Program-made: the position numbers and the translations under genes
The notes under the pieces: generated by a model
Database searches by the model: none
What the model saw: only the letters and a program-made list of their open reading frames with translations
Told to the model about the DNA's origin: nothing
Shown: piece by piece, positions 8,046-30,696 of the stretch
Layout of the letters: each line of letters begins with the position of its first letter
Position numbering within the stretch: position 1 is the stretch's first letter
Source of the DNA: Laetmonice hystrix
Lineage: Eukaryota
Direction of reading: 5' to 3'
NCBI GenBank assembly: GCA_965235115.1
Contig: OZ249440.1
Coordinates: 17,174,001-17,238,000, forward strand
DNA: 64,000 nt

Positions 8046-8082
8046 ATCTGACGTTATGTTTCCTTATCTTTCCAGGTAAGTG
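8046..8082 (+). other. Candidate recursive splice (ratchet) site 1, junction 8075/8076
   Basis: tctgacgttatgtttccttatctttccag|gtaagtg: branchpoint-like CTGAC, AG-free pyrimidine tract, CAG followed directly by a consensus donor. Confidence 0.6.
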
Positions 8083-8378
8083 GTTTGGGCGTGCTGGTGG
8101 GGGGCTCTCGGCACTGATTCTGTCTGCTGACATCCATGTAACCTTGGCCACCAGCTAAGTGACCCGCTTCACCATACCTGTACTGTCGGCACTTGATAGC
8201 ATGGGACTCTTAATTGTCTGTATAAGGTGGGCAATGTATGACAGGTGTTACGGGAGAGGGCGCCTTACAGGTAAAATAGGAACTGGGCAAGGTACCGAGA
8301 CCAAACTTGATAAGTGACTTACTCCATGCTGATCAAGCCAAGGTAGACCAGACCAGTGACTCTGGAGGGACCATATCA

Positions 8379-8968
8379 GTCACATTCTTGTGGATCTATG
8401 GACCATATCAGTTACGTTCTTGTGGATGGACCATATCAGTCATATTCTTGTAGATCTGTGGAACATATCAGTCACATTCTTGTGGATCTATGGACCATAT
8501 CAGTCATGTTCTTGTGGATGGACCATATCAGTCACGTTCTTGTGGATCTATGGACCATATCAGTCACGTTCTTGTAGATCTGTGGAACATATCAGTCACA
8601 TTCTTGTGGATGGACCATATCAGTCACGTTCTTGTGGATCTATGGACCATATCAGTTACGTTCTTACGGATAGACCATATCAGTCACATTCTTGTAGATC
8701 TATGGACCATATCAGTCACATTCTTGTAGATCTATGGACCATATCAGTCACATTCTTGTGGATGGACCATATCAGTCATATTCTTGTAGATCCATGGATC
8801 GTATCAGTCATGTTCTTGTGGATGGACCATATCAGTCACGTTCTTGTGGATCTATGGACCATATCAGTCACGTTCTTGTGGATCTATGGACCATATCAGT
8901 CACGTTCTTGCGGATCTATGGACCATATCAGTCACGCTCTTGTGGATGGACCATATCAGTCATATTCT
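8379..8968. repeat. Minisatellite of mixed 32-bp and 28-bp units, about 19 copies
   Basis: ggaccatatcagtcacattcttgtggat with or without a ctat extension. Confidence 0.95.
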
Positions 8969-10787
8969 ACCGAACATTCCCCAAGCTAGACGCCCCAGAC
9001 GCCGCCCCAACAGTCAGTCCTCACTGTCAGTAGTTGTTGGAAAGTGGCCTTTAAAGCAGTATACGGCCGGCCGGCCGCCTCCAGCTGCAGGGGGTGAGTG
9101 CCTCAACGGTGTCGATGTTCAATGAGGGTGATGTTGGCATGGTGACCTTTCACTGCCGAACGGGGTCATGATGTTGTAGCGGTGGTGACCTCTTCCAGGA
9201 AAACGGGGTCATGTAGGGATGGTGCCCTTGTACAGATTCATGAGGTCATGTGGTGGCCACTGATGATCTTGGGAGTTGTACGGGGCAGTGTGTCATGCTG
9301 TTGTGGTAATGATCAGGCTGTGCACAGGGATGTCATATGAACAGAATAAGGCGGCGGCTTTTTTTAATTTCAAAGCAAAATTGTGTCATCACGGAGACAG
9401 CACTAAGATATGCTTGACCCATGGACTCGAGGAACTCGATAAACCTAGGCCAGTAATAGTCCCAATCCAGGTCAAACTTAGGGGGGCCCTGGTAAGAACC
9501 ATAGCAACGGTTTCTAGTGGTTGACGTCGGCCCTTTTTCGGTAGCCTGAAATATGTTGCATATAACTAATTAATAATTGGCAGTTTCTGCACAACTGTGG
9601 AAAAACTGTACATTACGGTTTATATTTACCAGCCTTGCTATTTATTTCTTGACGGTAAAAAGGCAGCTCTGTTTGAATGCCACCTGTGTTGGCCTGAGTT
9701 GTGACCAGACAACGCCTGTCAGTCATGTTGGCTTTCCTTACCAGCTAGTGCCCACGGTGGACTGTTTCAAAAGTACACCTGCGTGTTGAGAAATGTGCCA
9801 TTTAGTTATTGGACTCCCGCCTCCGCACCAATTTGTCTAGTTTATGGGGCAGCTAAAGGGCGGACTGTAAGCTGCCCTGACCTTGCTGGGTCCAAACGGG
9901 GCCCAGCTTGGTTTGATAGATGTTATTGTGGATGCCTCCACTGGCCTTGGCATGCCAGCCTGTACTGTCTTGCAGCTCACCGCGAAAACCCTGAGAGACG
10001 GGCTCCTTCAAAGGATAAAGAAAGGCTGGGTAAATTTACTTCCTGATAAATGGCAATATACCCTAAGGTAGAATGGGGAGTTGGTGGATGAAGGTTCTTG
10101 TTACTTAAAATCAGGGAGAATTTGTGAAAAATAGAGCGTGATTCAAGGGAGGGTGTCCTTATGTCTGGTCCCGCTTTTCTTGACAAAGGCAGGCTGTATG
10201 GAATGAAAATGTAAAAAATCACTGAGTGGCGTCTGCTGTAGTTAGAGCAGAATAAAATGGTAAACTATGCATGGCGAAGTGTTCTTAATGTACTTCATTA
10301 GCTGAAAAAAAAAACAGAATCCTGTTCATACAAAGGCAGATAAAATCATTTGAAAAGTAGTTTGAACTGTGCACCGTATTCTTTTCTGACTACATTCACG
10401 TTATACTGCTTATGAATAGGCGCCAGGAGAAAAAAATCTTGGAAAAAAAGTAACGAGGCGATCTTTCCTGGACTCATGTGTACTGTTATAGTATGCGTGA
10501 TTTTTTAAAGAGAGCTAGAAGGACGCTATCTCCAAGTTATGCACGGGCATCAGACGTAACCCAGTTCACTTTCAGAATGTCTGGAACTTATAAAGAAAAA
10601 TTGTATAGCAGCTGCACCCTACTGGGATCAAACGCCGGTCTCAAGATTACTGTGCACACTCATTCGCATAGCATAAGGTATCAACGTCCATGCCCCCTCG
10701 GCCACTTCACTTCAGTGTGTGTGTGTTGGGGGGGGGGGGGGGGCTTGCTTAACAGGCTGCTTGTTCCTCTTGTGGGATGGCAGACAT

Positions 10788-11130
10788 NNNNNNNNNNNNN
10801 NNNNNNNNNNNNNNNNNNNNNNNNNNNNNNNNNNNNNNNNNNNNNNNNNNNNNNNNNNNNNNNNNNNNNNNNNNNNNNNNNNNNNNNNNNNNNNNNNNNN
10901 NNNNNNNNNNNNNNNNNNNNNNNNNNNNNNNNNNNNNNNNNNNNNNNNNNNNNNNNNNNNNNNNNNNNNNNNNNNNNNNNNNNNNNNNNNNNNNNNNNNN
11001 NNNNNNNNNNNNNNNNNNNNNNNNNNNNNNNNNNNNNNNNNNNNNNNNNNNNNNNNNNNNNNNNNNNNNNNNNNNNNNNNNNNNNNNNNNNNNNNNNNNN
11101 NNNNNNNNNNNNNNNNNNNNNNNNNNNNNA
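10788..11130. other. Assembly gap, 343 N
   Basis: Run of n; the ORF calls spanning it are artefacts. Confidence 1.
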
Positions 11131-12252
11131 CATGTACCTGACTAAACTGCACTAGCTGTCTTTTTCGTCAGACGCATTGAAACCATCCTATTTTAAGGAG
11201 ATCTATATCGGGCTGATATGTTTTAAACATTTATTCTATATATATATGACATTGTACCTAAGTGAAGGTTGAATTTTGTAAATTGACAGACCAGTTCAAG
11301 GTTGGCACTCTTAATTCAGTGTCACAAAACGAGTAGGCCAATTGTCGAGGTCAAACATTCAATTTGAAAGAGAAACTGAAAGTAGGCCTGTGGTATTAAC
11401 TTGAGTAACTGCAGCACCAGCACCACAAGCACCAGCACCATCAGCAGGAAGAAATCAGGCGGCCCTCTGCCATGCCGTCCCCAGGCGTGTAGTGGTTCAA
11501 TGATTGATGAGTGACCATCAGTGGGGCTGATTGGGGCCTGTCTCGGACTGCCGACCGAATGGCCCACTGAATGGTCAGTGTTACCACCCCCCAACCCCCA
11601 CTCTGCCGGCAGTTAGTCCGTCACGTCCGTCCAAACCGCGCCTGCCCGCCGGTTTGCCGACCCCGGAGAGCAGTCAAGGCTTGCCGTGTGGTCTGTCACG
11701 GCCCACTCCTCCAACCGACCCAAGCCACCTCCCCTGACGGTTACAATTAGGCACGCGGCTGGGGCATTAAGGCCAGTTGTTTGGCAGACAGCATAATTTA
11801 AGATTTGTGGAAAAACCAGAGTATAGGCCGGGGCTGAAAGGTGTTAGTCAGTGCTCCCAGCGGAGATTTTTTAACGCATAATAAACAGTTAAAAACATAA
11901 AAAATCCATGCCCATTCCAGTTGAAAGATCCTATTCATAGTAATAGTAATTGTAACGATTCTTGAAGCGGGATGCAAAGTTAAGGCGGTTTCGTGCTTAC
12001 GTGAATACTAGATTTTCAAAGAGAAATCCAGATGTCAAAAAAGAGATAAAAGCAACTCTTTCAATATAGTTTTTTGAAAAAGTCAACTGATGGAATCCTG
12101 AATTGAAATCCTTAAAATAAATTCCTATTGAAGATATCTCATTTCCTTATCCTTATTTAGCACCGTTGACTTTAACGTTAAGAGATATTATCAATGTTGG
12201 GCAACATTAATTTCCTGTTGCTTATACATTTTGTTGGCAGTGTACCTAGTAT

Positions 12253-12400
12253 GTCAGTGATGTAAGCCTTCGGCTGCTGATCATTGCCTCTCATTTCCGT
12301 TGACGGTTACTTGCAGCATGGTCGGTGGTTTTTCCTGGATACTCCAGTTTCCTCTTTAACAAATTATTCCCTCTGGAGGTTGCTGGTATGAGGCGTAAAC
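12253..12400 (+). mobile_element. SINE fragment with Meta/V-type conserved core
   Basis: ggtcggtggtttttcctggatactccagtttcctc resembles the core GGTCGGTGGTTTTCTCCGGGTACTCCGGTTTCCTCC, followed by a ...ggcgtaaac tail. Confidence 0.55.
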
Positions 12401-15149
12401 CCCGAATCCCATTCCCAATCCCTTTTGGAGAACAACGTTGAATACATTGCCTCATTTCCCGGGATGTCACGTGAGTCGTGAATGCATAGAGTATAGAATG
12501 ACCTTTGGTGAGAGTAGGCTGGTCATTGTCAGGGTATGAAGTTCAGAGTCTGAACCGGCACGTGGGGTCCCGTCAGTACGGGGGTGGGGAGGGCGGCAAC
12601 AGTGGGCCGACATGCTATAACCGAACCGGCGGGCATTCCGTCCCACGCCAGTTTCTCTCTGTTGTCGCACTCCTTCACGTTGTCTCTTTGATGTTGGCCA
12701 CTCCTCATTGTGTGCAAGTCGGCGCACAACAAAGGCCACCAGCTCCGGCTGAGCCGTACAATGATGTGTAACGACTGAATGTAGATTCTATACGGTGAGC
12801 GCCGACTTATTGTTCAAGGCAGAATGACCCAAATCCTTGCTATGTGGGATCCATTTTAATTTTCACTTCCAGCATGTTATATCATGTAATCACCTCTTAT
12901 GTAGTCATGGTGAAGGATTCTTGGAGCCAATATCATATCAGCATATCATATCAGCGACTGTGGCTGAGGGCCTGTTCCTGCTGTGTGTCTCATCGCCGTT
13001 TCAGTGCTCTTGACACGTCGCTGAAAGGGTATGGCGTTGTCCCGGTGTGCGGGATTCTTTCTTTGCCTTCATCGTCTTCATCAGATGTGTGCTGAAGATG
13101 GCCAACTAGTGCCGACAGGACGGCAAACCACCCGGAGTGGCGTGAGGATCATTCAGTCAGGGCCCCAGGAGTTGTTGGAACATGGGGAGGTCTTTGGGTC
13201 TATTTCACATGCAACTGGTGGTCTGGTGACGTGGTGTGCATTTTCTGGGAATCTTCTCAAGGGTTGCCCTCCTTTCCGTGTTATAGAGCTCTACAGTCAA
13301 CATTCATGGTCATGTTAATTTCCTTTTATATTACTGTGTTTTTTTTCGCACTACTTTATAAAAGTGAGTGTCATTTTTCGACAGTCTGAAACTCACATCC
13401 AAGCTCTGTCAACCATTAGTACAGCTCCCCGGAATATTATTATAAATTATTTACGTAGTAACTAGCATACCCAGGCAACAGACTCGGCTATCGTATAACA
13501 TCGTCAGCATGGAACCTTTCACATACGAAATACTATAGCTGTTGGACAGGACATCCGACATAGTCATGAATTTCTCTTGTCTCTCAGCAACACGTTTTGG
13601 CATGGCTTAAAGTTGCACGACTGTATATAAATCATGGTATCGTGGGATGTAGATGTTTGGACGGTTTTACGCCCTGTCCCTATGTTAAGGCCACCTTCAG
13701 GGCGTTCCTCCATTCTCTATGGTTTGAGTGAGCCAAAAACCCAGCGTCTGTTAGATAGAATGGTGCACCTTTCATTGGCTCTGTGCTGTGGGAGATAAAC
13801 AACCTGAAAATGGCACCAGTTTGATGTGGTGTGACGACGCCACCAAAGCCGCTGCCTCGTCCAGGTATTGCTAACAGTAGAGTCGGCGTTAGATCAGTTG
13901 ATCAGACAATATGCTTCCTTTAACTGGCACAAACCCGTAATTAGGCATCATTAGCGTCACATTAACCTATATATTCTATTTATAGAACTACAAAGGGATG
14001 CTTTTTGCTGTCACGAGTGTCGGAGGTTGTTGAATTTGAAGCATGGAAGTTTTTATCTGACTGCGCTCCATAAGAAGTCGGATCAACGTATTGGGGGAAA
14101 ATGATTTGGAAACAAGTCGGGATCGAGTCAGAAATGGTTGTGTAATGCCGGTCTTATGTCGCCCTTGGCGGTAGGTGGGGAAACGGGATGATTGGCTACC
14201 ACACGCACACACTGGCTGATCCTGTAGATGTTAAAGCCTTTAGAAGGTGGATGTTGGTTGTGTACACGAGGTAGATATAAAAAAGGGAATGCGGCCCTGG
14301 GGCTACGCGTTTCTCTCTCCCGATCTTATTGCTGAGGAATGGACAGACAACTCATGAAGTAATTATTGAGAAAACCACCTCGCTCGCTCGCCTGGGAAAC
14401 CACATGTTTTATTGGTGAATGATTTCATAAGTCTGCACTGTTAAAGTAATCTCGTATTGTAACATCATGGGACGCTTATAAAAACCGCAGGTAAAAGCCG
14501 TGTAAAATATCAGCTGTTGGTACTATATTGTACATGGCCCTGGTCCGGTTACAAGTGGTACTGTGCAGACCAGGTGGCCGGCTTTCTCCAGGGTTTGCCT
14601 GTGGGAGGAAGGGGTGTGCGGTTGTACAGCCATTATTCAGGCAACCAGCCGAAGGTTGATGCATTGAGATTTCTTGTGACACACAATCCTTTTTCTTTGA
14701 CTTCATTATTGGCTCGTTGTTTTAATGGAGTAAGTGGTCGGGCTGCCCTGGATCTTAGGGCCGCATGACGGCAGGGTCACATGTTGACCGAGTTGTGTTG
14801 TTGTAATAACATGTGGTTATCAAAATCACCTCCGGCGGGACCAGGGGCAAACCTTGTGGCGGGGACGAGGTCCCACACGTCAGGCTGGAGTTACTCGGCC
14901 ACGGACAGGGTCAGAGTTTGGCCTTGTTAAACGTGACCTTGTGACATCACGTGGGGGTTTGAAGGTCTTGAGGGCCAATCAGCTGGTCCCGCTGTGACCT
15001 AGACTGACCCTCGGTGACCTCGGTGATGGCGGAGAAACAAGAAGACAGAAAAAACCCGAAGGGATGGTTGGTTGAGAAGTACGTTGAGAAGGACTCGGGG
15101 TGAAATGAGGGTCTGGGGAGATGGTGGGGTTGGGGTGTATACCGCACCA

Positions 15150-17950
15150 CTTCACTATGAGGGCCTGATCAGTGCACAGGTCGCTCCATCTCCTGATTGG
15201 AAATGAACTCCCAACAACTAAACAAGGCACGCAGCTGGTGAAGACATATATATCCATTATACGTCAGTGCTACAACGTACCGAGAAATATATGATAGAGG
15301 CTTGATCATGATGGATCCAGCAGTGGAAGCTTCAGTGCTAGGTTGCAGGAAATTAGACTCAGGCATGCGAGAAACAGATTCACCATAGAAATCCTTGGCT
15401 CACGTGAACGTACGTTTCCCGGCGTCTGCTGGTGCGAATTCTGTTTTCCCAGTAGCAGCTGGTAATCAATACATGTTGTGAGTTATGTAAGTTTTAATTG
15501 TTGTAGCACCTTTTGTCGGCCTGTCCAGCTACATTCCATACATTCTCTGGTAGTCGGCTGAGCGCTGGGCGGAGAACGGTCGTGTGTAGATAGGCACCCA
15601 TTAACCTGATTAAATCTACCTTTAGACTGAAGGGGTTGTGGGCACCCAGTACCCAGAGCCTGACATTGGAATGATGGATAGGCCCTGGGTGAGGGCTGTT
15701 ATATTGGATGGAGGCCGGGAGGGGGAGGGAAGCAGGAGTGAGGGGGGGGGGGGGGGGCTTGCTGGTAAGAGGAAGGCTGGTGGTAGGATTGATACCTTTC
15801 TCGTCTTTTTAAACGCCTTATTTGTTTGTGGCCTTGAACCGGGGGTAGGCCACGAGGTTCGAATTTTTCTTTCCTAACGGATTTTCTGTGTCGCAGTTGC
15901 TATGGTAACAAGACCCTTGAGACCGCGTGTTGTCATGACAACTGGGTGCTTTATTGTTTGGTATGTTAGGGGGGTGATGTCTGATTGAAGGTGGTGCCTT
16001 CCCCACATCCACACCTACACCCAGACGCTTGAGGATGGTGACATGGGGACGCTGAGGAGGGTAACACGGAAGGCGACCTTTGATAGCCTGGGGGCGGGGG
16101 CTGATCGGATCCCTTGGTCCAGGCCTGGGGGCGGGGGCTGATCGGATCCCTTGGTCCAGGCCTGGGAGCGGGGGATGAACGGATCCCTTGGTCCAGGCCT
16201 GGGAGCGGGGGCTGATCGGATCCCTTGGTCCAGGCCTGGGAGCGGGGAATGAACGGATCCCTTGGTCCAGGCCTGGGAGCGGGGGCTGAACGGATCCCTT
16301 GGTCCAGGCCTGGGAGCGGGGGCTGATCGGATCCCTTGGTCCAGGCCTGGGAGCGGGGGATGATCGGATCCCTTAGTCCAGGCCTGGGGGCGGGGACTGA
16401 TCGGATCCATTGGTCCAGGCCTGGGGACGGGGACTAGCTGATCGGATCCCTTGGTCCAGGCCTGGGGACGGGGACTGATCGGATCCATTGGTCCAGGCCT
16501 GGGGACGGGGACTAGCTGATCGGGTCCCTTGGTCCGGGCCTGGGAGCGGGGACTGATCGGATCCCTTGGTCCAGGCCTGGGGACGGGGACTGATCGGATC
16601 CAGGAAGCTCGATGTAGCCTTACAAAAACCGGCCTGGACCACTGTGTCCGATATGTTATCTGAAATGCCAGAGAAGGCGGTCCCTGCAGTGGTCGTATAA
16701 ACCCCACTTGATCGGCCAGCCACGAAGGATCGCCTTGATAAGGTAGGCGTGTCGGGGGGGGGGGGGGGTGTACCTGAATGTCCAAGGGTTGCTGGGAGCG
16801 CCAAACATCCCTGGCCTGCATACATAGAGACTCCCCCAGTCTGAACACAACGGGTCGACCCTGAAATCGGGAACGATATTGGATCTCTTTCCACCTATCG
16901 CTGCAGTTCAATCTTAGCAGCAGGGAGAAATATGTTGGCTGAAGTTACGTGTTAAAAGAAATTGGTGGCGGGAAGGGGGGAGGGGGGGTTGAGGGTCATG
17001 TCTTTGGAGACATTTAAAGTGATAGGGGAAAGACTACACGGAACCTTTTCAAGGAAAGGTCACTGTGGGCCATCTATTGTGTTCAGCGAGAGAGTGGTTT
17101 GGGCGTTGCGTCTGTTCCCCCAGGTCTCCCAGCTCGGATTGTTGTTAGGAGCAGTGGTTGTAGAGGTGTTTGTGTGTTATTGACCTCTGTTTCCTTCAGA
17201 CAGGTTGTTTGTGACCGGTAGAAGAGGAGAGAGGCTGTGTTGTTCTGGGAGCCATTTCTGTTGTTGTCTCGGGTTGTTTTCACATGTTTGCCGGGATAGG
17301 TCCAGAACATACTTCCTCTCCCTGCGTCATGTTGACTCAAAACTTATCCTCTCGAACGCGGCCGTTTTTGACTAACCTGTACATACAGCCACAGGGTGTT
17401 GTAACTTGTAGAACTTGTCGGGTCATGAAAATCCTTGAAAGTCGTGGAATCTCAACAATATCCGCGGGCCTGGGAATCCAGGAAAGTGAGAAAATGAACT
17501 CGTTGAAATCGATGCCACTGACTTGATTATGTACGCTCATTGTTATCCAGCGAAGCCCTAATAAATAGGGTTTGGAGGCATTGAACTTTACCTGTGAGGA
17601 CTTCGAACTCTGTACTATACACTGAATTATTGTTGTGTTGTTACGTCGAGAACAATTCGTTTCCCTGATCATGCATCAATTGGTGCATGGTTCAGAATGC
17701 GGGTCGGTTTTAAATGATAAGAGGATATACAGGGAGGAGAGTCGGAGGGATCTGCACTACATACGTCCACATTGAGAATGGACAGTGTGATTTCATGGTT
17801 TGCAATATCAATTAAACTTGAAGTTGAACGATCCCGAGTGCCGAATAAACGGATGTTTTCACATGAATCTACCTGATCTGATTCCATGGAGAACTTTAGA
17901 TTGTAATGAAAGGGCGGAATAATCTCCACGTCACCACCCTAAGTTAAAGC
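15150..17950 (-). mobile_element. Heavily decayed CR1/L2-like LINE (ORF1, endonuclease, linker), interrupted by a minisatellite
   Basis: CENIRLFG (ORF1 RENIRIFG-like), TGGVSMY (GGGV.IY), GVYTT (YRPP region), APPSIRHHP (SDH region) and AKDFY appear in the expected order. Many stops. Confidence 0.45.
16085..16600. repeat. 37-bp (some 41-bp) GC-rich minisatellite, about 14 copies
   Basis: Unit ctgatcggatcccttggtccaggcctgggagcggggg; source of the 298-aa Pro/Arg-rich ORF. Confidence 0.95.
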
Positions 17951-18880
17951 GGCGGAGATTAGCACCAAGTACTTGGGGAGAGTGCTGTTTATCTGGTATT
18001 GAGAGGAGAAATCGATCCAGAGAGAGAGATAGATACTTCTTTATCTAGTAAGTATAGAGGAGGGAGAGTGGCTCAAAGACCCCACGGGCAGACAGAGAGA
18101 GCTTACGTTCAGGTAGGAGCACAAAGTTTAGTTTAGTTCACATCCCCTAGGGGCAGTAGAACCCGAGCACCAGGGTGAACCCAAGCCCAGTCAATCTGAT
18201 GACTCTGAAGTTGAAAAATGACACGACGCGGACGCTTCAGTCGAGTAGAAGGCAAAGGGGACACTCCAAGTCCAACCAGATCTGGCGTCGCACTGCCAAC
18301 TAGACGCTCAATGACTGACACTTTCTGGGCTTCACACCCTTGGAACTGCGACATGCAGGAAATAAATTTCAATTTTATGTGAGACCTGTCTATTCTTAGA
18401 CATCAGAACCTGTGCTTCAAACGAATCAAAGGGACTATTTTCATCGAAATATGACAAATGTTATTTTGGAGCAAATCTATGTGGACATATGCCATTAGCC
18501 TTGAAGGGTTGGAGAGGGGCAGCCGGTGGGGAAGGAGGTTTAGCCGACCGTAAAACCGAAATCTTGGAGTGGGTTCAAGCTGAAAGCTCCCATATGTTGT
18601 GTATTAGTCCACAGTAGCTTACCATGGTGATTGGAGCTTGGCCCAGACCGCCCCAGACAGGCTCAGCCGGCTGAGAAATGTTGAGATTTGTGGGCTGGGG
18701 GCCAGGAGAGTCGGGTTGAATTATTTGGGGCAAGGAAGGAGGTAGAGGAAACGAGCCTCTCTGTCCTTTTCTTCTCTTCTTCCTCCTTGTCCTCGTTCAG
18801 GGTTAGTCAACGTGAAATGTACATGTTCATAATAACTACGAAGAGCTTTCTACGTTTAGCTTTCATGATATTTTCATGAT

Positions 18881-18923
18881 CCTATTATTTTCTTTCTGAC
18901 GGTTTTAATTTTCCAGGTGAGTG
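18881..18923 (+). other. Candidate recursive splice (ratchet) site 2, junction 18916/18917
   Basis: cctattattttctttctgacggttttaattttccag|gtgagtg: same architecture as site 1. Confidence 0.6.
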
Positions 18924-20190: not shown

Positions 20191-23100
20191 AAACTGGTGC
20201 GAGGCCGAAGACAGTTTATGATTTGCTGCAGCTGTAAGGCCTGCATTTTGTTTCATAAAAAAGAAAAGTCCATGACTGTGAAGGTTTCTAGCCGCACCTG
20301 ATTGGTATGATTGTGGTGAATCATGTGCTGTATGCGTTGCCATGGCAGTCCCCTCATCTCCAGACTGTATTCCTGGCAGGGATGATTTATGAGGGCGGGG
20401 TTAGGAAGTAGGTTGATGCGTAGTGTTCCTACAGTTAGGGTGGTCTCCCAGGGCACGGTTTTTTGTTCGGAAGATCTGATTGGGTGTTCAAGTGAAACTA
20501 TCCAATCGCAAGCCATGAGACAATGTTTTGAGTATAACATTGGGTGATGCGGTCATGAATGCCGTCCAGACTCCTATACGGAAGAGTTAAAGACCACCAT
20601 CAAGAATCAAGATGTAAGCATCTGCAGACTTTGGTTGATTGAGGATGCCTGGATCCCTTCCTGCAAGGATACATCGGGTGACAGTCTGCCTCTGGTCTGT
20701 GGAAATTCCCACTGTTTTCAGTGGAAATTTTACCCAAGGGGAGATTATCGTACACCAAGTTCGACGGCAGCTGGCCTTTGTTATGCCAACCGATGTGTGG
20801 CAGACAGTCTGTCTGACAGGTAGACGTGGCACGGATCATGAGAAACGGCCATAAATAATTCACCCCTCTCAACACCCATCCCCCACCACCCCCACCCCCA
20901 TCGGTCGGCAGGTACTATTGTCCCGCACGCACGTGCAGCTGATCCACATAGCCTGGCCCCGATTGAAAGAAGACATAATGAAACGTTCAGTGAACCCTTG
21001 AAATTGCCGTGATTCACTGGAAATCGTTTAGTGACCATGTTTGCGCCGAATCCCAGACCTTGGTTATTCTCTAGTCTAGTCTAGGTCGTGTTAATATCGG
21101 GATGTGGTGGAGATGTGGTGAGATGCCAGGAACTGGGGGTGAGACTGCTCTTCAAGTATAGAGGGCTTTGGCTGAGAGGCCCTTGGAAAAATGCCTTTGC
21201 AGCAACAATGTTGGAACAACGAGTTCTATACTCGTTGGTTGGAACAAGTGCATGCAGGAAGGAAGGACTTGAGTAAAAACCCTAAGTCGACAGTGAAGGC
21301 CACCAACAGATTACAGGGTATCAGTAATATCTTATGGCTTTGCGAATCACAACCTCTGTCCTACACGGTAAAGTTGGTCCCTGTCTGGTCGGGCCTCAGC
21401 ACCATAAAGACCGTCCTTGACGACACTCTGACCTAGTTAGTCTGTTCCGGACCACAATACAAGGACAAGATGTCCGCATAGGTACTCCAAATAAAATGGA
21501 ATGGAAAAGAAATTAAAGAAATGGAACAAAAAGACTTAACGTAACGGGTTTTTTTCGGGTAGGGGATGGGAGCACTTCAAGCATTGACCAGCCACGGCGG
21601 AACCGCTTTAATATCCGTCTGGGGGCCCTCTGTCAGGGGTGAAGAGTATCTTGTAAGGCATTGAATGGAAAGACTGTTCACAGGACAGAAGGGTCAAAGT
21701 GGAAGAGAACTTCGTCTTGTTAGTTTGGGTTGGAAAGAAACATTTAGAAAGGACTTGGTCTTTTTCAAGATGTTAAAACGGAGGGAAAGTGGTACACGAG
21801 ATGCCTGCAAGCGTTGAGGTTTGTCCAGGAACTGTCTTGGTGTGTGGTGGGGTGAGATGGACAGTTCCCTATATGTCCCTCCTCACTGTCTGATTGAGGG
21901 TCATTGTGTTGTCGGTGTACCTCATCAGACGGGCAGAATGAGACCAGGGAGCCGCCCCATCTCACCCCCAGCCACCCATTCTCTGGACACCATTGTCGGG
22001 TGAACCTTTATTATAGTAGGATTTCTTACATTGGCAGTCTGCACTGTACCGTTATTACTTGCTCAAAGTAGGCAGTGTAGACTCATCGGGGCACGTTTAG
22101 ACAGACGAACGATCCAGGAGTTGCAGGGGGGGGGGGGGGGGGTGTGGCCTGCGTTCACGCTCAGAAAAAATGTGGCTTTTGTTTCGCGGCAAATTCACCA
22201 TTCTACTTCCATGATTATTTCAGACTCTGTTAGATAAGAGTCTAGACTGTTATAAGCGATGTCAGAGCCATGTCAGTCTGGTAGTGTACCGAGGGACTTT
22301 AGGTAAATCCGGTCACAGGACTGGATTGCCTCAAGCAGCTCTGTCATGAATTATTTAGGTTTATCCAACCCGAGTTGACATTTCTTTCAGCAGCATATAC
22401 ATTTGTACAAGTTTAAAAAATATTTTTTTGGTGGGTCATTTACACATGGCTCGTTTCATTCAGTTCAGGGCTAGGCGGAATGACCTGAGATGTTTGATGT
22501 GATTAGACGGAGCAGGAGGGACCTCCCCCATCCCCCTCTTCCCGCAGAAGTCACCAGGAAGGGTGTAAGTTAACACAGCTTCAAACGGACCACAAAGTCA
22601 GTTCACTGCATAAAAGCTCAGACATTGTGTCTCACATAATGTAGTATGAAACTGGGAGGGTGTAGTCCATCTATTATTAACGTATACATGTTTGTCTGTC
22701 TGTCTACGGAAGGCTTTCGTTGCCATGGCTGCTCCACTGCCGATGACTGAATACATGTTTTTTGCCACATTTTGGGGAGGCGGTTTCTGTACGGTCGGCG
22801 TTATAACAAGTGTGTGTGCCTCAGGTGGTCAAGGTAGTGGTGAAGGAAATAGGTGACTGTCAGCATGCATGCGTGAAGTGTATGTCCTGGTGGACTTAAC
22901 GGGATCACCTAGGCCAGGACATGGCGAGGCTAGGATTCCACGTCTAATGGTGCCCAAGAGGCGAGCACACTGATTGTGAAATGTACCCTCTGGGTTTCTG
23001 CTGACATTTCTGTGCAAACAACTTATTTCCTGTAGCGCAAACAGTGTATCTGCGTACATCGTGATTAGATGTTGAGATTTCTGCCCAGTTTGTGACTGGA

Positions 23101-23927
23101 AGTGATACCATAGCTCTTATACTGATGGTTGCTGAAACAGACTGGACGGACAAACATTTCTTTTCGTTTTGGTAACCAGGATGGGGTCAAGGCGTCTAGA
23201 ACTTTTCCCACTGGTACCCCCCCCCCCCCCCCCCCATCCCTTATTTAAACTAATGCTGCTGCTAACGCTACTGCATCCACAATCATTGACCTAATTTTGT
23301 CCATGATAAGCCGGCAGACAGTGAGTTATATTGCACCTTGACCTAGAATAGAAATGGGTCAAGGACAGAGGCTGTGCGTGCTTTCTAGAGGCTGCTGGGA
23401 GGGGAAGGAATCTGGTCAGACAGGGACCGGTAGGAAACAAGGGCAGATAGATTTCCTTTATGAGAACACTAGCTCACTTGGTCTCAACGTCAGTGCTTGC
23501 TCTCAGTATCAGTGACAGTCCTGAGGTAAGTTCAGTTTTGGGCAAATTAAATAAATGATTAACAGTTGGTCCAAGGTTGCATGATGAGCCGGTTTGACAG
23601 ATGCGTGATGGTGTTGTTAATGACAGTGGTATTATTAACCAATTGTCTGTTGCCGTGTTGTACCTACATGAGATTGGACCCGAGTGACAGGGTTCACCTG
23701 GGGATACTAAGTACCTCACCTACCTACCTGTACCAGCCTGCACACTTCCATAATAAGCGTTTGGTCAGGTGGTCAAGGCACTCACACTGACTGATTGACT
23801 GGCTCTGTTACTGGTCAGTGTGGGGTCACGACCCCCTGACCCCGATCTGACCCCAGCTGGCCAGTGAACAGCCGGCAAGAATCACCTGAACAACTTGTTT
23901 GGTACCTCCTCTAATCCGCCTGTAGTA

Positions 23928-24074
23928 GTCCTAAGATGGGCCCTAACACACCAGGCCCGACATGTGGCGGACATTCTAGTTTTACAACAGGGAACAAAAG
24001 TCCTAAGATGGGCCCTAACACACCAGGCCCGACATGTGGCGGGCATATTTCTAGTTTTACAACAGGGAACAAAA
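23928..24074. repeat. 72-bp tandem duplication, 2 copies
   Basis: gtcctaagatgggccctaacacaccaggcccgacatgtggcgg...gggaacaaaa at 23928 and 24000. Confidence 0.9.
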
Positions 24075-24133
24075 TATTGGAGGAGGTGGGACAAGCAATT
24101 TTGGATCTAGCCTAGCTATGACATTTTAAATTT

Positions 24134-24276
24134 AAAGTTCAGGTAAGCCTATAAGACAAATTGCCGGTTGATGTAGTGAGACAGTAGAAAGTTTGTGTAG
24201 AGCAAAAGTTCAGGTATGCCTATAAGACAAATTGCCGGTTGATGTAGTGAGACAGTAGAATGTTTGAATAGAGCAA
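24134..24276. repeat. 71-bp tandem duplication, 2 copies
   Basis: aagttcaggta(a/t)gcctataagacaaattgccggttgatgtagtgagacagtagaa occurs twice. Confidence 0.9.
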
Positions 24277-24891
24277 GTTCCCGACTCTACAAAATCTACA
24301 TTTTGGTTGCCCTTGGCCAGGTGCACACAGAAGCCAGAATAGCCTCCCGTAGTGTGACTCGGGGCAGTGCAGGGCAGAAGCCAGTATTGATGTGGATATT
24401 CTACTAGTCATGGTGTATAGTGTTTCCTTGCCATTGCCAACCAGGTCGCAGGTTTAGCAGGAGGTCTCTTCAGTCTCCTCCGTCTAGAGCAGCCTGTAAA
24501 TCAGGCAGCCTGCCATACCCCGTCCCACTCGCTGGGGGTGGTTCTTATATGATCCAAGGGACAAGGTCAAAATCCCGATTTGAGTTGGTGGGGGTAGGTG
24601 ATGTATTGCGTTGTTGGGATCCGCCCAGCCCTGAACCAAAGCCCCCACCCTCAACCTCACCCCACCGGGAGTGTGTTGTGTTGTGTCCCTCATATAGGAG
24701 GAGTGTGTTTGGCCGGGCCGGCTGGCTGGCTGGCTGGGTAGATATTGTTTGGGGGCCGTTTGTGTTGGCCGAGTGCCACCACTGGTGGCGGTGGGTGGAG
24801 CTGCCCACCGACACACACATATTCACCAGACGGTTGGGACCACGGGTTGTTCTCAACCCCCCACCCAGTTACCGAGCCCTCACAACACGGA

Positions 24892-24934
<43 letters not shown>

Positions 24935-27900
24935 GGGGGGGGGGGGGGGGGGCTCTCATATATAGCAAGGCTGATAGAAAGAAAGACTCTTAATAGCCTC
25001 CCTGAATTTTTCAGTTTATGTCAATTTAGAAAGTTTGTGAAATTGAAGGGCATAACACTTAAACTGAGGATCTCATTAAAAAGGGAAAGTGAAAGATCCT
25101 CCCACTTATGTCGTGAATGACCCTAGACCCGCCAAAAAGGCAAAACGGAGCCTTGCTTTGATCTATGTGTGCCCTCGACCTGAGGAGGTGAGAAGCTGAA
25201 CTCCAAGTGAAAGATGGCGAAGCCATGAGCAAGTGTTGGTTTGGTTTGAAAAGGAATGGAGTGAGTTCAGGCTCAGTGTTCCAGACATTGTGTCAGCAAA
25301 GTCGGGGCCGGATGGGGGGGGGGGGGGGGGGATGGTGCTATTTTTGATGTAATGAAGGGAGAGGATTTCTAATTAATGACCGGGTCAGATTGTATCCCCC
25401 CGTGATTGTGTGATATTTATGAGATAAAGAGCTACCGTCCCAGTCAAGGAGTAAGTTATCAAAGGACCTGTTTCTTCAGCACAGACTCTAGGGTGACTTG
25501 TTTTAACTTACGTCTAAAGACAAAGTAAATCATGTTGTGTAAGGATCTAGTTCTCTATACCGACAACTCTGTAAAACAGCAGTAAATGCCCAAAAGAAAA
25601 AACGTTCTTGGATTTTGTCAAGAAATCTTAAATCCTTTTATTCATGGAAAATTAAAGAGTTTTGTTTTTGTAGCTATAAAAGTCTACCTTTTAAAAAGGT
25701 CATTCCCACAGCATCTTTCACCACTTGTGGCTTCTTCGGGTCATGCAGTCTCACTGAATAGCTCTTTGTCCACACTGGCAATGTTGGAAGCGCCAAATGT
25801 CTTCTGGAATACCAATAGCTTAATTCTGTGGCTTCTGTGAGGGCCCTAGCCTTAAATGGTTTCCTTCATTAAATAGTTTCATCAGTGTGTAATTCAATTT
25901 TCTTCATGAGAGGCCACGTTCCAAAGCTTTGAATGGAATTAGGTGAGAAAAAGCCAGTATTCTGCATTCCAATTTTGCCTAAAGTCACATTGAGCCAGAT
26001 TAGAGAGGAGTTGATTACCAGTTAGTGCACTATTTTACTCGAGAATTTACCAGTGGAAATTGAAGTAAACAGAACATATTAAAGTATAAATTTTATAGAA
26101 AGGTCCAAGCTACATTTGTACTTGGGAAGTGAGAGAACCCCCTGGTTTCCCGTTCTCCAGTCAGGGAACACTAAGACTAGTAGTGGAGGAAAATACGGAA
26201 ACAACAAGTTTTATAATTTGGGAAATTTCACAGTCAATTTGAGTAAAAAAAAACGTGGGAATACGGCATCTAAATATTTCAAGAGGGATTTATCAGCATC
26301 GCAATGTGTTCTTCTTTTATTAAGTTCCCTCACAGCTGGTAAACAAAAAAAAACATTACATTATTTGCACAATGATTTGCGTGATGTTCAAAAGCGTGTG
26401 GAGAGGACCCAGAAATACAGATTTCAAACAATACAGCAAAGATTAGGATCTATGACTGAAACATGCACACAGAAAACGAACACTTTGCATAGTTCAGGCA
26501 CGCCTAGTCATCAAGGGGTAATAAAATCCCACTGTATGCATTCTTTTGTTTGGTTGAAAGGAGAACAAGGTGTCGTCATTTGAATAAAATGGTTGCTACT
26601 AAAAAACTGTATCTGTTAGTAGCTTTTGTGTACTGTATATTATATCTGGTTTAGGTCATGCGTTAGGCGTTATCGCCTTGTAGAGTAGGGCAGTCAAGTT
26701 GACTGTGCTTTGTAATGTCAATGAGCAGGGTTATTGATTTAATGAAAAGCACACGCTGTCACTGGCATGGCCCCAAATGGCGGGTATCTCACTGGCAGAG
26801 TCAATCAAGTGTGTTTTCCAACAACTCGTCCAAGAGCAGTTGTGATCGTCAAGTTCGTCCTTTTGTTATGATTTGAATGTGGAGAGATACAGCCACAGGT
26901 TGAACAGGATCCGAGACATGTGGCTTATAAATCATGGATGGTACGTGATGGCATTCAGACTGAAGCCCCGGGTGCCTTTAAGAGGCTGTTCACGGTCAAG
27001 GTCAATTGGCAGGTTTGTTTTGGTCTGTAGTTCCAGGGATGGCCGCACGGTGGCAGCAGCAGTCGGGACGCTCCCCCACGAAGGCCACCGTGTGTGACAG
27101 GCGGCAATGAAAGAAATGTAAAGCAACCGCTATTAGATTAAAACACGGCATTTTAAAAACAGTTTTTTTGGTTACCAATAAAGGTAATGCAGTTGTCTGC
27201 CTGAGACTAAAAAGTACGTACTTGATTTTTTTAGTGGCACCGTCTGATTTGGATAAGTAAACTGTGCCATTGCCAGAGGGAATGGTTAAATGGAATAAAC
27301 GGCTGACACAGAAAAAGACATCACGTGTGTAGTACACAGTGGAAGATTCAACCACACATTTTCCGCTTGAGGGACTCCTTGGAATAAACATACAAAAACG
27401 TGGCGACCTAGATTCATTGCGGATGCAGTTTGAATCGTAGGTAAGGCCCTGAGGCTGAAGTATTAACGCCAGAATGAGTCAAAGCGAATAGTGGCCTTGT
27501 CAACTGTTTGTGCATTAAATATATTTTTACGATTTGAATTGTTGTCACCAATGCCCTCCTAAAAAGCTGGCCATGGAAGTTGGCTTGGGGACCCATGAGA
27601 CGCTTGGCCCAGATTCAAAGTGAAAGGACTCAAAATACTTATTGGCTGTAGTGTCAGCTTGACAAACGTGATTGATCAATTACTTATATATGTACTACCA
27701 TATGTAGGAAGGTCTGGTGACAATTAGGGCTAACGTACAATAGTCGATACAAAATTCAGGCTTAGTAATGAAACATTGAATATACCTGTGCACACAGAAT
27801 CAGCATTTATAACACTTATGCCAGTTATTTCTGTTGGTTTGGCATATATTATAACTTTATGAGATGTATACCTGCTAGTACGGCAGTTTGTCTTACTTAC

Positions 27901-30531
27901 ACGGCGTAGTGCCTGGAGGATCGAGGTACTGGAGCCGGGCACCCCCCCCCCCTCCCCATGGCGTTCATCAATTCTGGATGTACATGCTGAGGAAACGTCC
28001 AGACAATGGCGATCATATGTCATGAGGCAGGGTCCTTTGTGGCGAGGTCTCTTTATAACACGGAGCATTGATCAGTGCCGCAAGACATGATAGTAACCAC
28101 CTTCACGTAACGATCGCCTGGGGACTTTGTTTGGATGACAATGGTGAAAGTATAAAAGGGAACATGGTAGTTGACATACCGTGTGCATGGCCTCATGTTC
28201 TAATGACATATTTATAGATGCTCCAGGTTTTTAGAGCAGGTTTATGTAGGCTGTCTGGAGGGCGTATATTTGGTGTCATTACGGAAACGTTAAGGAAAAA
28301 TGCTTGACGCTTTTGCTATTGCTAGAACCAATGACAACAAAAGAGTGGGGATGAATTCGCATAAAATTCTCCTTAACTGAAAGCAAGTAGGCAGGTGGTG
28401 ACAGTGATTTATTTTGTATCATTTCCATGTAAATATATAAAGACGGCAAGGATTTTTTTCGTTTCTGTCGTCAGCCTTAGAACATCAGGGCTTATTTAAC
28501 ATGTCAGCAGATGAACTAAACTAGGCTAAATTATTTATGTCTATCATGAAAACGTAAACTGGCCAATCGTTGTCCAGACTGACCAGTCTATGAAATTGTT
28601 TCCTGTAGCAGGGGAAGACACGACAAATGTAGACAGTCCAAAACGGTCCCAAACGTAGGGTTTTAACCCAAACGACTTTGTTCTATGAAACAAACAATAC
28701 AAGTAAAAGTAAGCCTGAGTGTAGTTACTGCTGGAATTTTGCCAAAGTCCTACTTTCCTACTGATCACGTACTGCTACAGAGAATGATGAGTTGATGTAG
28801 CACTGACCATTGCTCACTGCCAGGTGTTAAAGTAGATATACTGACAAAAAGGGCAGAGACACACAGGAGGTGGAAAAAGTAGGTAAAAGCACTAACAGAA
28901 CAAGTCAGGTGACTTTTCACAGCCAAGGGATGTTTTCTCCTTGTCGGAGTTTCCAAAAGGGTGTCATATCAAAGGCCTTCTCTAGAATGCGACCACAGGC
29001 TGCCTTTACTGAATCCGGGCGGCGGACTGCCGCTGATGAGAGGAATGCCAGATGAGACAGTATGGGTTCTGACGTAATGGAAAGTAGTGTTTACTATTGG
29101 AGTCTATCCCAATATTGTATTCTATCCCAATCTCTCTTCAGCTATGCACACACGCAGAGATGAAGGCAGTTGTTGATGGGCTGGTGGTTTTGAAATTGTA
29201 TGACTGGTTCTTTCAAAGATTTCACAGCATGTAAAGATGAAGTCTGAGTTTGATGGTAGAGGGGGGGGGGGGGGGTAAATAAATGATCCGGCTTACACTT
29301 TGAATAATACGTGATCTACCATAGCGTGCAGGCTAAATAACACGAGCGTCAGTGTCTGTTGTGCCTTTGGAGTACCTGAGGACAAGGGGGGGGGGAGAAT
29401 AACCGTATAGAAACATGTAGTCAACTACAGTAAATTGAGTAATACACAGTACTTCAGTGAAACAGGCAGTTCTCCAATGTTTGTTCAAGTATTTGGCGGA
29501 TTACAAGAAAACATTTTTTTGAAATCTAAAAGGACATTGGGTTAAAAAGGCTTGAGTCCTTATGGGGGAAGATGTTTTCTGCAGTGATCTATAAGACGAA
29601 GAACTAAAAAGGTAGCAAGCTATTTGTATCAGGCTTCTTTGTCCCTCTCGGAGAGAGTGGGATGGGTTCCAGGAAGTGTGACATTATGGTGAAGAAGCTT
29701 AGTTTGTATTGATGTGGATGCTGGTGTGTATTTATAACTGAGAGGCCCCTGGGTGGAAACCTTTCTCGGTGATACTCTGTGATAGAACTTGTAAGTAGAG
29801 GACCACTGTAGTAGTGAAAGGAAAGCTCCCCTCCCCCCATGTCCTGTTTGAGGATCCGGCCTAAGTAGTCTGGGCACTGTATTATGACAGCCTGCACTGT
29901 TTGATTGTAACGCCTGAAAGCCAGAGGGGTTTTGATGTAGCTACTCGTGTGGCTGCTAGAGGAAAAGTCCCAGACGGCAGGCCGTCTGTCTGGGCTGAAG
30001 TAATAGAAACCGGCTATGTTCTACGGCTGCTTTGATACGCAAAAATGGGATAAGTGATATAGGAGATCATTTCCAGTGCCAAAGGCTCTACTTAGAATCT
30101 GTCGAATCTATCTACCGGCACAGCTGAATATGGTATATTAGACATCAGAAGTCATTGCATGAGTTTCTGTTCATAATATTTTCAATGGGAATTTTAACAA
30201 ATAGAGAACATTTCATAGTTATTTCTCAGCTCCAATGTGCTAAAAAGTGAATTTTGCAGAAAGAACCCCCCCCCCCTCCTCTAAGGTTTATCGGTTGTGC
30301 TGAGTAGTTTGTCGGGTTGTCCACATCCAAGGGGTTTACATATCTGTGGGAAAATCTTTCAGAATTATTAACGGTTGCATATTAGGAATGCTTATTTGTT
30401 GTAGAACCAGTTTATCATAAAATACATTTGTTCTTTTGAAGAGTCAGACAGAGTCTGATGCTTGTTACAGACGTAATTCACATTCACAGTCATATTTCTT
30501 AACCATATTTTGCTTTTTTCGTTTATTCCAG

Positions 30532-30696
30532 GTACTGGTTGAATTCGACGATTGTGAGTGGAAACGGCGAGAATGGATTCGCATTTACGAAATCTTTCAA
30601 GTGTTCATTGTGGAGTATACGTTAGTGTGGGCCCCAAGATGCTATCCAGAGGAGGAATACAAAAAGACAAGGCAACGAATACTATGGCCAGCCCTG
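30532..30696 (+). CDS. JMJD1C: JMJD1C/KDM3-family histone demethylase, internal coding exon (equivalent to vertebrate exon 2), 165 nt, phase 0-0
   Basis: Acceptor ttttttcgtttattccag|, donor ctg|gtaagt. Translates VLVEFDDCEWKRREWIRIYEIFQVFIVEYTLVWAPRCYPEEEYKKTRQRILWPAL, colinear with remembered human JMJD1C VYVEFDDLEWDKREWVKVYEDFSTFLVEYHLIWAKR...QIQWPAL. Confidence 0.93.

What the first reader, a model, noticed from the sequence alone, without database searches (positions are those of the whole stretch)
8046..30532. Evenly spaced recursive-splicing architecture in the long upstream intron of JMJD1C/KDM3
Seen: the only two CAG|GTRAGT 9-mers I found on the + strand (junctions 8075 and 18916) both follow TCTGACG plus an AG-free pyrimidine tract ending TTTCCAG. 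I saw no equivalent on the minus strand. With the true acceptor at 30531 they give segments of 10,841 and 11,615 nt, close to the largest ratchet-free intron between coding exons (about 13 kb). Established: 3'SS/5'SS ratchet points remove long introns stepwise in Drosophila (e.g. Ubx, kuz) and in some long vertebrate genes. Inference: this gene removes its >30 kb intron recursively. I know of no report for this gene family or for lophotrochozoans, but could not search.
Basis: partly seen in the sequence, partly recalled or inferred. Interest (0 to 1): 0.85.

Follow-up and report, generated by a model that had tools for sequence, protein, structure and literature searches.

The report
Four candidate recursive splice sites, KDM3 intron
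The first intron of this animal's KDM3/JMJD1C-like gene is 64 kb long and carries four evenly spread, sense-strand "acceptor fused to donor" sites that look just like the ratchet points flies use to cut long introns out in steps, but no RNA intermediate has yet been seen.

Summary
CAG|GTAAGT (8075|8076) and CAG|GTGAGT (18916|18917) are the only CAGGTRAGT 9-mers in the window. Both lie on the + strand, behind TCTGACG and an AG-free pyrimidine tract.

The 9-mer count alone is not above chance. The gene model changes the picture. Coding exon 1 lies 33.8 kb upstream of the window. A spliced RNA contig joins it directly to exon 2 (30532), so intron 1 is one intron of 64,335 nt.

All four match TTNCAG|GTRAGT, the fly ratchet-point core. 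All four lie in single-copy DNA. The genome-wide frequency of that motif predicts 0.06 sites per intron strand (P about 5e-7; unseen part alone P about 5e-4). The antisense strand has none.

The segments are 15.1, 8.2, 18.6, 10.8 and 11.6 kb, more even than random (P about 0.02). The orthologous 43.6-kb intron of another species has one such site, at its midpoint.

No junction, lariat or sawtooth data could be obtained. Genome-wide enrichment tests were inconclusive.

Verdict: probable (about 0.6) recursive splicing, a new member of a known kind. First-stage readers flagged similar, unchecked series elsewhere in this genome.

The parts
1..30531 (+). 3' 30.5 kb of intron 1 of the KDM3/JMJD1C-like gene. 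The whole intron runs from window -33803 to 30531 and is 64,335 nt. Its 5' part lies in loci L004, L003, L002 and L001.
   Evidence: Exon 1 (MAHKYREEIVGKRFL...HPDIS) is at L004:6041-6196, which is window -33959..-33804. Its donor is TCG|GTAAGA. X4 RNA contig 25 carries the end of exon 1 directly in front of 30532.
8047..8081 (+). It has a branch-point-like TCTGACG (A at -25), an AG-free pyrimidine tract, TT at -6/-5, and CAG|GTAAGT with the junction at 8075|8076.
   Evidence: The DNA is single copy in the genome. An in-frame stop lies 14 codons after the junction. Only weak downstream donors exist, at 8226 and 8270.
18895..18922 (+). It has TCTGACG (A at -18), an AG-free tract of 55 nt, TT at -6/-5, and CAG|GTGAGT with the junction at 18916|18917.
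   Evidence: The DNA is single copy. There is no extended similarity to site 1.
10788..11129 (.). Assembly gap (342 N) inside the segment between sites 8075 and 18916. It makes the 10,841-nt segment length an estimate.
   Evidence: The left flank is a (GT)n/poly-G run. The gap was not filled.
30532..30696 (+). Coding exon 2 (VLVEFDDCEWKRREW...WPAL), part of the N-terminal Tudor/PWWP-like region of KDM3.
   Evidence: RNA contig 25 shows a GT..AG joint from 30696 to 33743.
33743..33871 (+). Coding exon 3.
   Evidence: RNA joint and loose end. Homology to FKPLVDK...VEF.
33872..46884 (+). Intron 3, 13,013 nt. It is the longest other intron seen and has no ratchet-like site.
   Evidence: The loose end behind 33871 reads the start of exon 4 at 46885. 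No strict site lies outside intron 1 in the 124 kb scanned.
46885..47097 (+). Coding exon 4 (FQDVDTSVP...VIQSYNDSTR), with donor AGG|GTGAGT.

Best explanation
Intron 1 (64,335 nt) of this KDM3/JMJD1C-like gene is removed in up to five steps by zero-nucleotide recursive splicing.

Proposed mechanism: exon 1 ends in TCG. It is first spliced to the acceptor half of a ratchet point, which consists of a branch point, a pyrimidine tract and TTNCAG. That splice places GTRAGT directly behind exon 1 and so regenerates a donor (TCG|GTAAGT or TCG|GTGAGT). Each regenerated donor is at least as close to consensus as the native TCG|GTAAGA. The new donor is then used for the next step, through sites at window -18735, -10503, 8075 and 18916, and finally to exon 2 at 30532.

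Shown: the four sites, their strand, their single-copy context, the single long intron, and the absence of the sites from the dominant mRNA.

Inferred: that the sites are used at all, and in what order.
For: 1. Gene model. Exon 1 is at window -33959..-33804 (tblastn E 1e-16 to 3e-20). The X4 RNA contig joins the end of exon 1 directly to 30532 and continues through exons 2, 3 and 4.

2. Site count. Four sense-strand sites have YAG|GTRAGT, at least 65% pyrimidines at -23..-4 and an AG-free zone of at least 15 nt. There are none on the antisense strand and none elsewhere in 124 kb on either strand. Dinucleotide shuffles expect 0.13, and none of 2000 shuffles reaches 4.

3. Genome-wide frequency. 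All four match TTNCAGGTRAGT. That motif occurs 1169 times on both strands of the 627-Mb genome. This gives lambda 0.060 for the intron strand and P(>=4) = 5e-7. About 0.01 such 64-kb strand-windows are expected genome-wide.

4. Out-of-sample test. The hypothesis was formed on the window.

5. Fly ratchet-point hallmarks that I did not use for selection. TT at -6/-5 is present in 4 of 4 sites; it is found in 99.5% of fly ratchet points (10.1101/006163). CAG is present in 4 of 4. CTAAC or CTGAC lies at -24, -25 and -18 in three sites.

6. Spacing. Segments of 15,069, 8,232, 18,578, 10,841 and 11,615 nt are more even than random breakpoints. P(min) = 0.017, P(max) = 0.035, P(sd) = 0.013. They fall within the fly range of 2.6-63.6 kb, mean 18 kb (10.1101/006163).

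7. All four sites lie in single-copy DNA.

8. Reading on from exon 1 into each site meets a stop within 3-24 codons. This matches the out-of-frame cryptic exons that must be skipped (PMC8605326).

9. Orthologous intron in another species (ENA ERZ24900295 ctg6578l, exon 1 81% identical). It is 43,643 nt and has one sense-strand PPT-TAG|GTAAGT site at +21,052, which is 0.48 of its length. No comparable antisense site exists. Fly sites tend to lie near intron midpoints (PMC6110457).
Against: There is no direct RNA evidence. The only RNA data set for this organism is one run kept as assembled contigs (X4). It cannot show rare intermediates, and it was not listed as holding the site-1 region.

The thresholds of the 'strict' motif were set after the sites were seen.

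A clear cryptic RS-exon donor exists only at -10503 (+88, CAG|GTGAGG). It is weak or absent at the other three sites.

Site -18735 lacks a YTNAY branch-point match.

Cross-species support is thin. Species B has one site, with Y fraction 0.60, just under my cut-off. Nothing aligns beyond the 11-nt core GTAAGTGGTTT. That species also has two antisense AGGTGAGT sites with poorer tracts.

Genome-wide enrichment of the motif is modest and within k-mer noise.
Confidence: 0.62

Rival explanations
1. The sites are edges of ordinary, rarely used or tissue-specific exons. These could be cassette or poison exons that begin at the AG, or alternative first exons that end at the CAG. They would not be zero-length ratchet points, and the intron would normally be removed in one step.
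For: Site -10503 has a good donor 88 nt downstream, so an 88-nt exon could be defined. Vertebrate recursive sites are mostly such RS-exons (PMC8605326). Only one RNA run could be examined.
Against: The dominant mRNA contig joins exon 1 directly to exon 2. X4 is not listed as a holder of the site-1 region. A plain acceptor has no reason to be followed by a perfect GTRAGT four times. A plain donor has no reason to be preceded by a branch point, a pyrimidine tract and TTNCAG four times. Any inclusion gives a stop within 3-24 codons.
Confidence: 0.15
2. The four sites are chance cryptic sites with no function. The first-stage scan of very many windows would then simply have picked a lucky cluster.
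For: CAGGTRAGT alone is at chance level in the window. AGGTRAGT in the intron is 6 against 3.3 expected, P = 0.12. Motif thresholds were chosen after the fact. Genome-wide k-mer controls vary by 1.6-fold.
Against: P is about 5e-7 from the genome's own motif frequency, with about 0.01 such clusters expected in the whole genome. Two sites were found in sequence that the selection never saw (P about 5e-4). All four are on the sense strand, with none antisense. The spacing is even. TT at -6/-5 is present in all four.
Confidence: 0.13
3. The GTRAGT motifs are sense-strand U1 snRNP binding sites that protect the long intron from premature cleavage and polyadenylation (telescripting). The upstream pyrimidine tracts would be incidental.
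For: GTRAGT is somewhat commoner on the sense strand of the intron (30 against 20). From my own knowledge, sense-strand U1-site enrichment is established in vertebrate genes.
Against: This does not explain why 4 of the 6 sense AGGTRAGT sites carry CAG, TT at -6/-5, an AG-free pyrimidine tract and, in three, a branch-point consensus. It also does not explain the even spacing.
Confidence: 0.05

Closest known systems
Drosophila zero-nucleotide ratchet points (Ubx, kuz, luna and others; Hatton 1998, Burnette 2005, Duff 2015 = bioRxiv 10.1101/006163; Pai 2018 = PMC6110457)
   Same: Both have a juxtaposed acceptor and donor of the form (Y)n-TT-N-CAG|GTRAGT. Both lie on the sense strand of an intron longer than 40 kb. 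Several sites occur per intron (1-6 in flies, 4 here). Segment sizes fall in the same range. Branch-point-like motifs lie 18-25 nt upstream. The sites are absent from mRNA. Any cryptic exon would be out of frame or stop-containing.
   Different: Use of the sites is not demonstrated here; there are no junction reads, sawtooth coverage or lariats. The organism is neither a fly nor a vertebrate. The host gene family (KDM3/JMJD1C) is not among reported cases in the papers I could search. Conservation could not be tested in close relatives.
Vertebrate recursive splicing through RS-exons (Sibley 2015; Blazquez 2018; summarised in PMC8605326)
   Same: A regenerated donor sits at the 5' end of a cryptic exon that would introduce a premature stop. 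The proposed logic is donor competition.
   Different: Only one of the four sites (-10503) has a convincing downstream donor to define an RS-exon. The number of fully suppressed sites in one intron resembles flies more than vertebrates. PMC8605326 notes only nine such sites definitively in mammals.
KDM3/JMJD1 histone demethylase genes (host gene)
   Same: Exons 1-5 match KDM3B/JMJD1C-like proteins of arthropods, Lottia and vertebrates. The exon 1 relatives found in other species carry Pfam PF22989 (DUF7030).
   Different: Only the N-terminal exons lie in the window. The JmjC domain was not examined.

Membership tests
Recursive splice site / ratchet point (fly type) | Acceptor and donor juxtaposed: pyrimidine tract, NCAG|GTRAGT | tested here: met
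   All four sites have CAG|GTAAGT (three) or CAG|GTGAGT (one). Y fraction is 0.65-0.80 at -23..-4, and AG-free zones are 17-55 nt.
Recursive splice site / ratchet point (fly type) | Lies on the sense strand inside a long intron (flies: 11-133 kb) with no annotated exon at the site | tested here: met
   Intron 1 is 64,335 nt. The RNA contig joins exon 1 directly to exon 2.
Recursive splice site / ratchet point (fly type) | TT at positions -5/-6 (99.5% of fly ratchet points, 10.1101/006163) | tested here: met
   4 of 4 sites. Exon 2's ordinary acceptor also has TT there, so TT is not specific to the ratchet-like sites.
Recursive splice site / ratchet point (fly type) | Branch point about 21-36 nt upstream | tested here: inconclusive
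   CTAAC lies at -24, CTGAC at -25 and CTGAC at -18. Site -18735 has no YTNAY match. This is sequence only; no lariat reads are available.
Recursive splice site / ratchet point (fly type) | Splicing intermediates: exon-to-ratchet junction reads, sawtooth coverage, segment lariats | not testable with these tools
   Only one RNA run (X4) exists here, kept as contigs. Reads were laid on exon 2 to fix the gene model.
Recursive splice site / ratchet point (fly type) | Evolutionary conservation of the site | tested here: inconclusive
   Species B's orthologous 43.6-kb intron has one sense PPT-TAG|GTAAGT site at its midpoint. Only the 11-nt core matches site 8075. No close relative's DNA could be fetched. 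Only 16 kb of species C's intron was available, and it held no such site.
Recursive splice site / ratchet point (fly type) | Cryptic RS-exon with a downstream donor weaker than the ratchet donor (Joseph 2018, PMC8605326) | tested here: inconclusive
   Site -10503 has CAG|GTGAGG at +88. Site 8075 has only 7/9 matches, at +151 and +195. Site 18916 has a poor match at +87. Site -18735 has none within 400 nt.
KDM3/JMJD1C-like gene | Homology of the N-terminal exons to KDM3 family proteins | tested here: met
   Exon 2 gave 165 hits, including proteins of 1753-2572 aa; one cluster checked is named lysine-specific demethylase 3B-like / JmjC protein 2C. Exon 1 matches with E down to 3e-20. The JmjC domain itself was not examined.

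The most novel reading that the evidence does not exclude
Fly-type zero-nucleotide recursive splicing is not an insect speciality. It would be an old bilaterian way of handling very long introns, used genome-wide in this non-insect, non-vertebrate animal (perhaps hundreds of sites). In the first intron of KDM3 it would be maintained across distant species: four sites here and a midpoint site in a species whose exon 1 is only 81% identical.
Probability: 0.3. Interest if true: 0.72.

Novelty: new member of a known kind. Interest (0 to 1): 0.55.

Why it matters
As far as I know, and in the papers I could search, recursive splicing has been demonstrated only in Drosophila and in vertebrates, where it mostly works through RS-exons. 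A four-site, fly-style series in a 64-kb intron of a chromatin regulator, in an animal outside both groups, would help answer two questions. One is whether the mechanism is ancestral or convergent. The other is whether intron length itself selects for ratchet points every 10-20 kb.

The prediction is cheap to test: four RT-PCRs from exon 1.

If the sites are used, damaging any of them should put a stop-containing cryptic exon into the KDM3 mRNA. They would then be functionally important non-coding positions that genome annotation misses.

Tried and rejected
1. The bare 9-mer count as evidence. It is at chance level.

2. A common repeat or transposon origin for the sites. There is no similarity between sites. 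Each site is single copy.

3. Nested genes or a LINE in the intron. Nine intronic ORFs gave no Pfam family above its curated cut-off. The 298-aa antisense ORF at 16015-16911 is a 37-nt minisatellite. I therefore found no support for the 'antisense LINE relic' note.

4. An exon 1 inside the window. None exists. It lies upstream.

5. Genome-wide enrichment without annotation.
   - Y8-CAGGTAAGT gave about 43 non-satellite hits against 19 for the reversed control, while R8-CAGGTAAGT gave 35 against 39 (Fisher P = 0.014).
   - TTNCAGGTRAGT gave 1169 against 710, AANCAGGTRAGT gave 774 against 604, and the decoy TTNCAGTGRAGT gave 778 against 1115.
   - The effect sizes are no larger than the scatter among the controls, and satellites inflate the counts. 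I judge this inconclusive.
   - A same-strand pair at C5:27965822/27972193 turned out to be a 99.75% duplication.

6. A larger sample of real genomic background.

7. Looking for exon1-plus-ratchet read-through peptides among predicted proteins. No protein from this species was returned.

8. Relatives' DNA around exon 2. There was no DNA, or only a 1.1-kb contig.

9. Species C. Its contig ends 16 kb into the intron, with no site in that stretch.

10. Searching proteins with the 82-aa ORF across site 1. I did not run this, because a conserved core of about 10 residues could not reach significance.
Full report
**Observation.** CAG|GTAAGT has its junction at 8075|8076 and CAG|GTGAGT at 18916|18917.
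- They are the only CAGGTRAGT matches in the window. Both are on the + strand.
- Each follows TCTGACG (8047-8053; 18895-18901) and an AG-free pyrimidine-rich tract ending TTTCCAG.
- On its own the 9-mer count means little. 1.12 are expected, and 31 of 100 dinucleotide shuffles give two or more.
- The two sites share nothing beyond the short motifs. Each lies in DNA that is single copy in the 627-Mb assembly.
- The assembly gap at 10788-11129 sits between them in intronic sequence, next to a (GT)n/poly-G run. It makes the 10,841-nt distance an estimate and has no bearing on reading frame. I did not try to fill it.

**Gene model.** The ORF starting at 30532 (VLVEFDDCEWKRREW...) is the second coding exon of a KDM3/JMJD1C-like gene.
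- It gave 165 hits, including full-length proteins of 1753-2572 aa. One cluster that I checked is named lysine-specific demethylase 3B-like / JmjC domain protein 2C.
- In those relatives about 52-60 residues (M..R.EIVGKRFL..W.W..GVIRA...) precede this exon. Nothing like that is in the window.
- I fetched 60 kb upstream. It contains MAHKYREEIVGKRFLSVRSASKLKTNKISEWEWRSGVVRAVTHKDSSHPDIS at window -33959..-33804 (L004:6041-6196), followed by TCG|GTAAGA.
- Intron 1 therefore runs from -33803 to 30531 and is 64,335 nt.

**RNA check of the premise.** Four public runs hold this locus, and none is on record as RNA.
- X1-X3 cover the whole laid stretch, introns included, and behave as DNA.
- X4 has 58 Mb of contigs and holds the exon share of the words.
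- Laid on 28000-33950, X4 contig 25 (864 nt, depth 24) matches exon 2. It skips 3,046 nt with GT..AG ends to exon 3 (33743-33871). It then continues into letters that are the start of exon 4 at 46885.
- In front of 30532 the contig carries 242 letters ending CCACAAAGATTCTTCTCATCCGGATATTTC, which is the end of exon 1.
- So X4 is spliced RNA, and the dominant mRNA joins exon 1 directly to exon 2. All candidate sites are intronic. The refuting condition 'the gene starts downstream of 18917' is not met.

**The unseen half of the intron.** I scanned the full intron for AG|GTRAG on both strands. Two more sense-strand sites of the same build appeared:
- ...tattctctcctttgatctgttacag|GTAAGT at -18735 (L002:1265|1266);
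- ...gtaactaaccagtaatctgttgtgttttcag|GTAAGT at -10503 (L002:9497|9498).

Both are single copy.

I defined a simple strict motif: YAG|GTRAGT, at least 65% pyrimidine at -23..-4, and at least 15 nt free of AG.
- The sense strand of the intron has exactly these four sites. The antisense strand has none. The other 184 kb of strand in the 124-kb region has none.
- 2000 dinucleotide shuffles give a mean of 0.13 and never more than 2. A first-order Markov simulation gives 0.13-0.19.
- Those thresholds were chosen after seeing the sites, so I add two cleaner measures.

First, all four sites match TTNCAGGTRAGT, essentially the fly ratchet-point core.
- That 12-mer occurs 1169 times on both strands of this genome, counting all real donors, repeats and true ratchet points.
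- This predicts 0.060 in the intron strand. P(>=4) is 5e-7, and about 0.01 such 64-kb clusters are expected in the whole genome.

Second, the hypothesis was formed on the window alone. The 33.8 kb upstream is new data. It holds 2 sites where 0.03-0.07 are expected, P = 5e-4 to 2e-3.

**Anatomy of the sites**.
- All four have C at -3 and TT at -6/-5. Duff et al. found TT there in 99.5% of fly ratchet points against 44% of ordinary acceptors (10.1101/006163).
- Three have a strong branch-point match: CTAAC with A at -24, CTGAC at -25, and CTGAC at -18. Site -18735 has none.
- After the first step, each site would regenerate TCG|GTAAGT or TCG|GTGAGT. These are at least as close to consensus as the native TCG|GTAAGA.
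- Reading on from exon 1 (phase 0) meets a stop after 13, 2, 13 and 23 codons, so any inclusion would be a poison exon.
- A convincing downstream donor that could define a cryptic RS-exon exists only at -10503 (CAG|GTGAGG at +88). The others have weak candidates or none. That is a gap relative to the exon-definition model of Joseph et al. (PMC8605326).

**Spacing.**
- The five segments are 15,069, 8,232, 18,578, 10,841 and 11,615 nt.
- For four random breakpoints in 64,335 nt, a minimum this large has P = 0.017. A maximum this small has P = 0.035. A spread this small has P = 0.013.
- 'Evenly spaced' survives in a weaker form. No piece exceeds 19 kb, and the 13-kb intron 3 has no such site.
- Fly values are comparable: introns of 11-133 kb, 1-6 sites, and segments averaging 18 kb (10.1101/006163).

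**Other species.** Exon 1 peptides from unnamed ENA assemblies are 77-81% identical.
- For one species (ERZ24900295 ctg6578l, GC 34%) I walked along the contig with six look-ups until exon 2 appeared. Its intron 1 is 43,643 nt.
- It contains one sense-strand site, ...tgtttttctttttgtag|GTAAGTGGTTTA, at +21,052. That is 0.48 of the intron. It has 82 nt free of AG and TT at -6/-5.
- The two antisense AGGTGAGT sites have poorer tracts.
- The chance of one such site is about 0.12. The chance of lying this near the midpoint is about 0.035. Pai et al. report that fly sites tend to lie near midpoints (PMC6110457).
- Apart from the 11-nt core shared with site 8075, nothing aligns. This supports the architecture but does not show orthology.
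- A second species' contig ends 16 kb into the intron with no site.
- DNA of closer relatives was not obtainable.

**Genome-wide tests.** These were inconclusive.
- Eight pyrimidines plus CAGGTAAGT gives about 43 non-satellite hits against 19 for the reversed control. Eight purines give 35 against 39.
- The looser patterns and a same-composition decoy show that controls scatter by 1.6-fold.
- Satellites and duplications contribute to the counts.

**Literature.** No paper in the library links recursive splicing with JMJD1C, KDM3 (one incidental co-mention), molluscs (two incidental co-mentions) or lophotrochozoans. I did not verify the organism's phylum. It is neither a vertebrate nor a fly, judging by the identity of its KDM3 exons to those groups.

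**Verdict.**
- The sequence evidence for a four-site, sense-strand, evenly spread ratchet-like series in a verified 64-kb intron is strong.
- The functional claim rests on analogy with flies. I put recursive splicing at about 0.62.
- Rivals: ordinary rare exons 0.15, chance 0.13, and U1 decoy sites 0.05.
- It is a new member of a known kind.
- First-stage readers noted similar series in other long introns of this genome (Eph, NCX, TMEM132, an LDLa gene). I could not check them and do not count them as support.

Noticed in passing
window 8363-8968: A minisatellite (32-nt unit, about 19.5 copies, with 92- and 152-nt higher-order periods) starts 288 nt downstream of candidate site 8075. It accounts for the 199-aa ORF at 8390-8989.
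   Followed up: partly
window 16086-16601: A 37-nt minisatellite (13.7 copies) underlies the 298-aa antisense ORF at 16015-16911. No Pfam family matched. I found no sign of the LINE relic suggested by another first-stage note.
   Followed up: partly
window 39650-40598: A 36-45-nt minisatellite in intron 3 gives a long false ORF (GMLDPWLHCQSV repeated).
   Followed up: partly
G000:C12:26313499-26316376: A satellite with about 63 listed copies at roughly 37-nt or 74-nt spacing. Each copy contains CCCCCAG|GTAAGT, a ratchet-like motif repeated in tandem on one strand.
   Followed up: no
G000:C5:27965822 and 27972193 (L010, L011): Two T-rich CAG|GTAAGT sites lie 6.4 kb apart on the same strand. They sit in a 99.75%-identical duplication of at least 2 kb, so they are not independent sites.
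   Followed up: yes
G000:C1:15934599, 15962320, 15989691 (- strand): Three TTNCAGGTGAGT sites on one strand are spaced 27.7 and 27.4 kb apart. This could be another ratchet-like series or a tandem duplication. There is also a 4.1-kb-period array of TTACAGGTGAGT at C1:26798520-26827535.
   Followed up: no
L004:6188-6210; L014:10148-10175; L015:10148-10175: The exon 1 donor context TTTCG|GTAAGA(A)TTT is nearly identical in three species whose introns are otherwise unalignable.
   Followed up: partly
window 28000-33950: DNA contigs of the same sample differ from the reference at roughly 1-2% of intronic positions, with many small indels. This points to high heterozygosity. X4 RNA contigs also cover short intronic pieces at 32082-32232 and 32304-32454 at low depth.
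   Followed up: no
window 30529-30537: Exon 2 itself begins with GT (ccag|GTACTG). The real acceptor is therefore also an AG|GT, but with a poor donor half.
   Followed up: no
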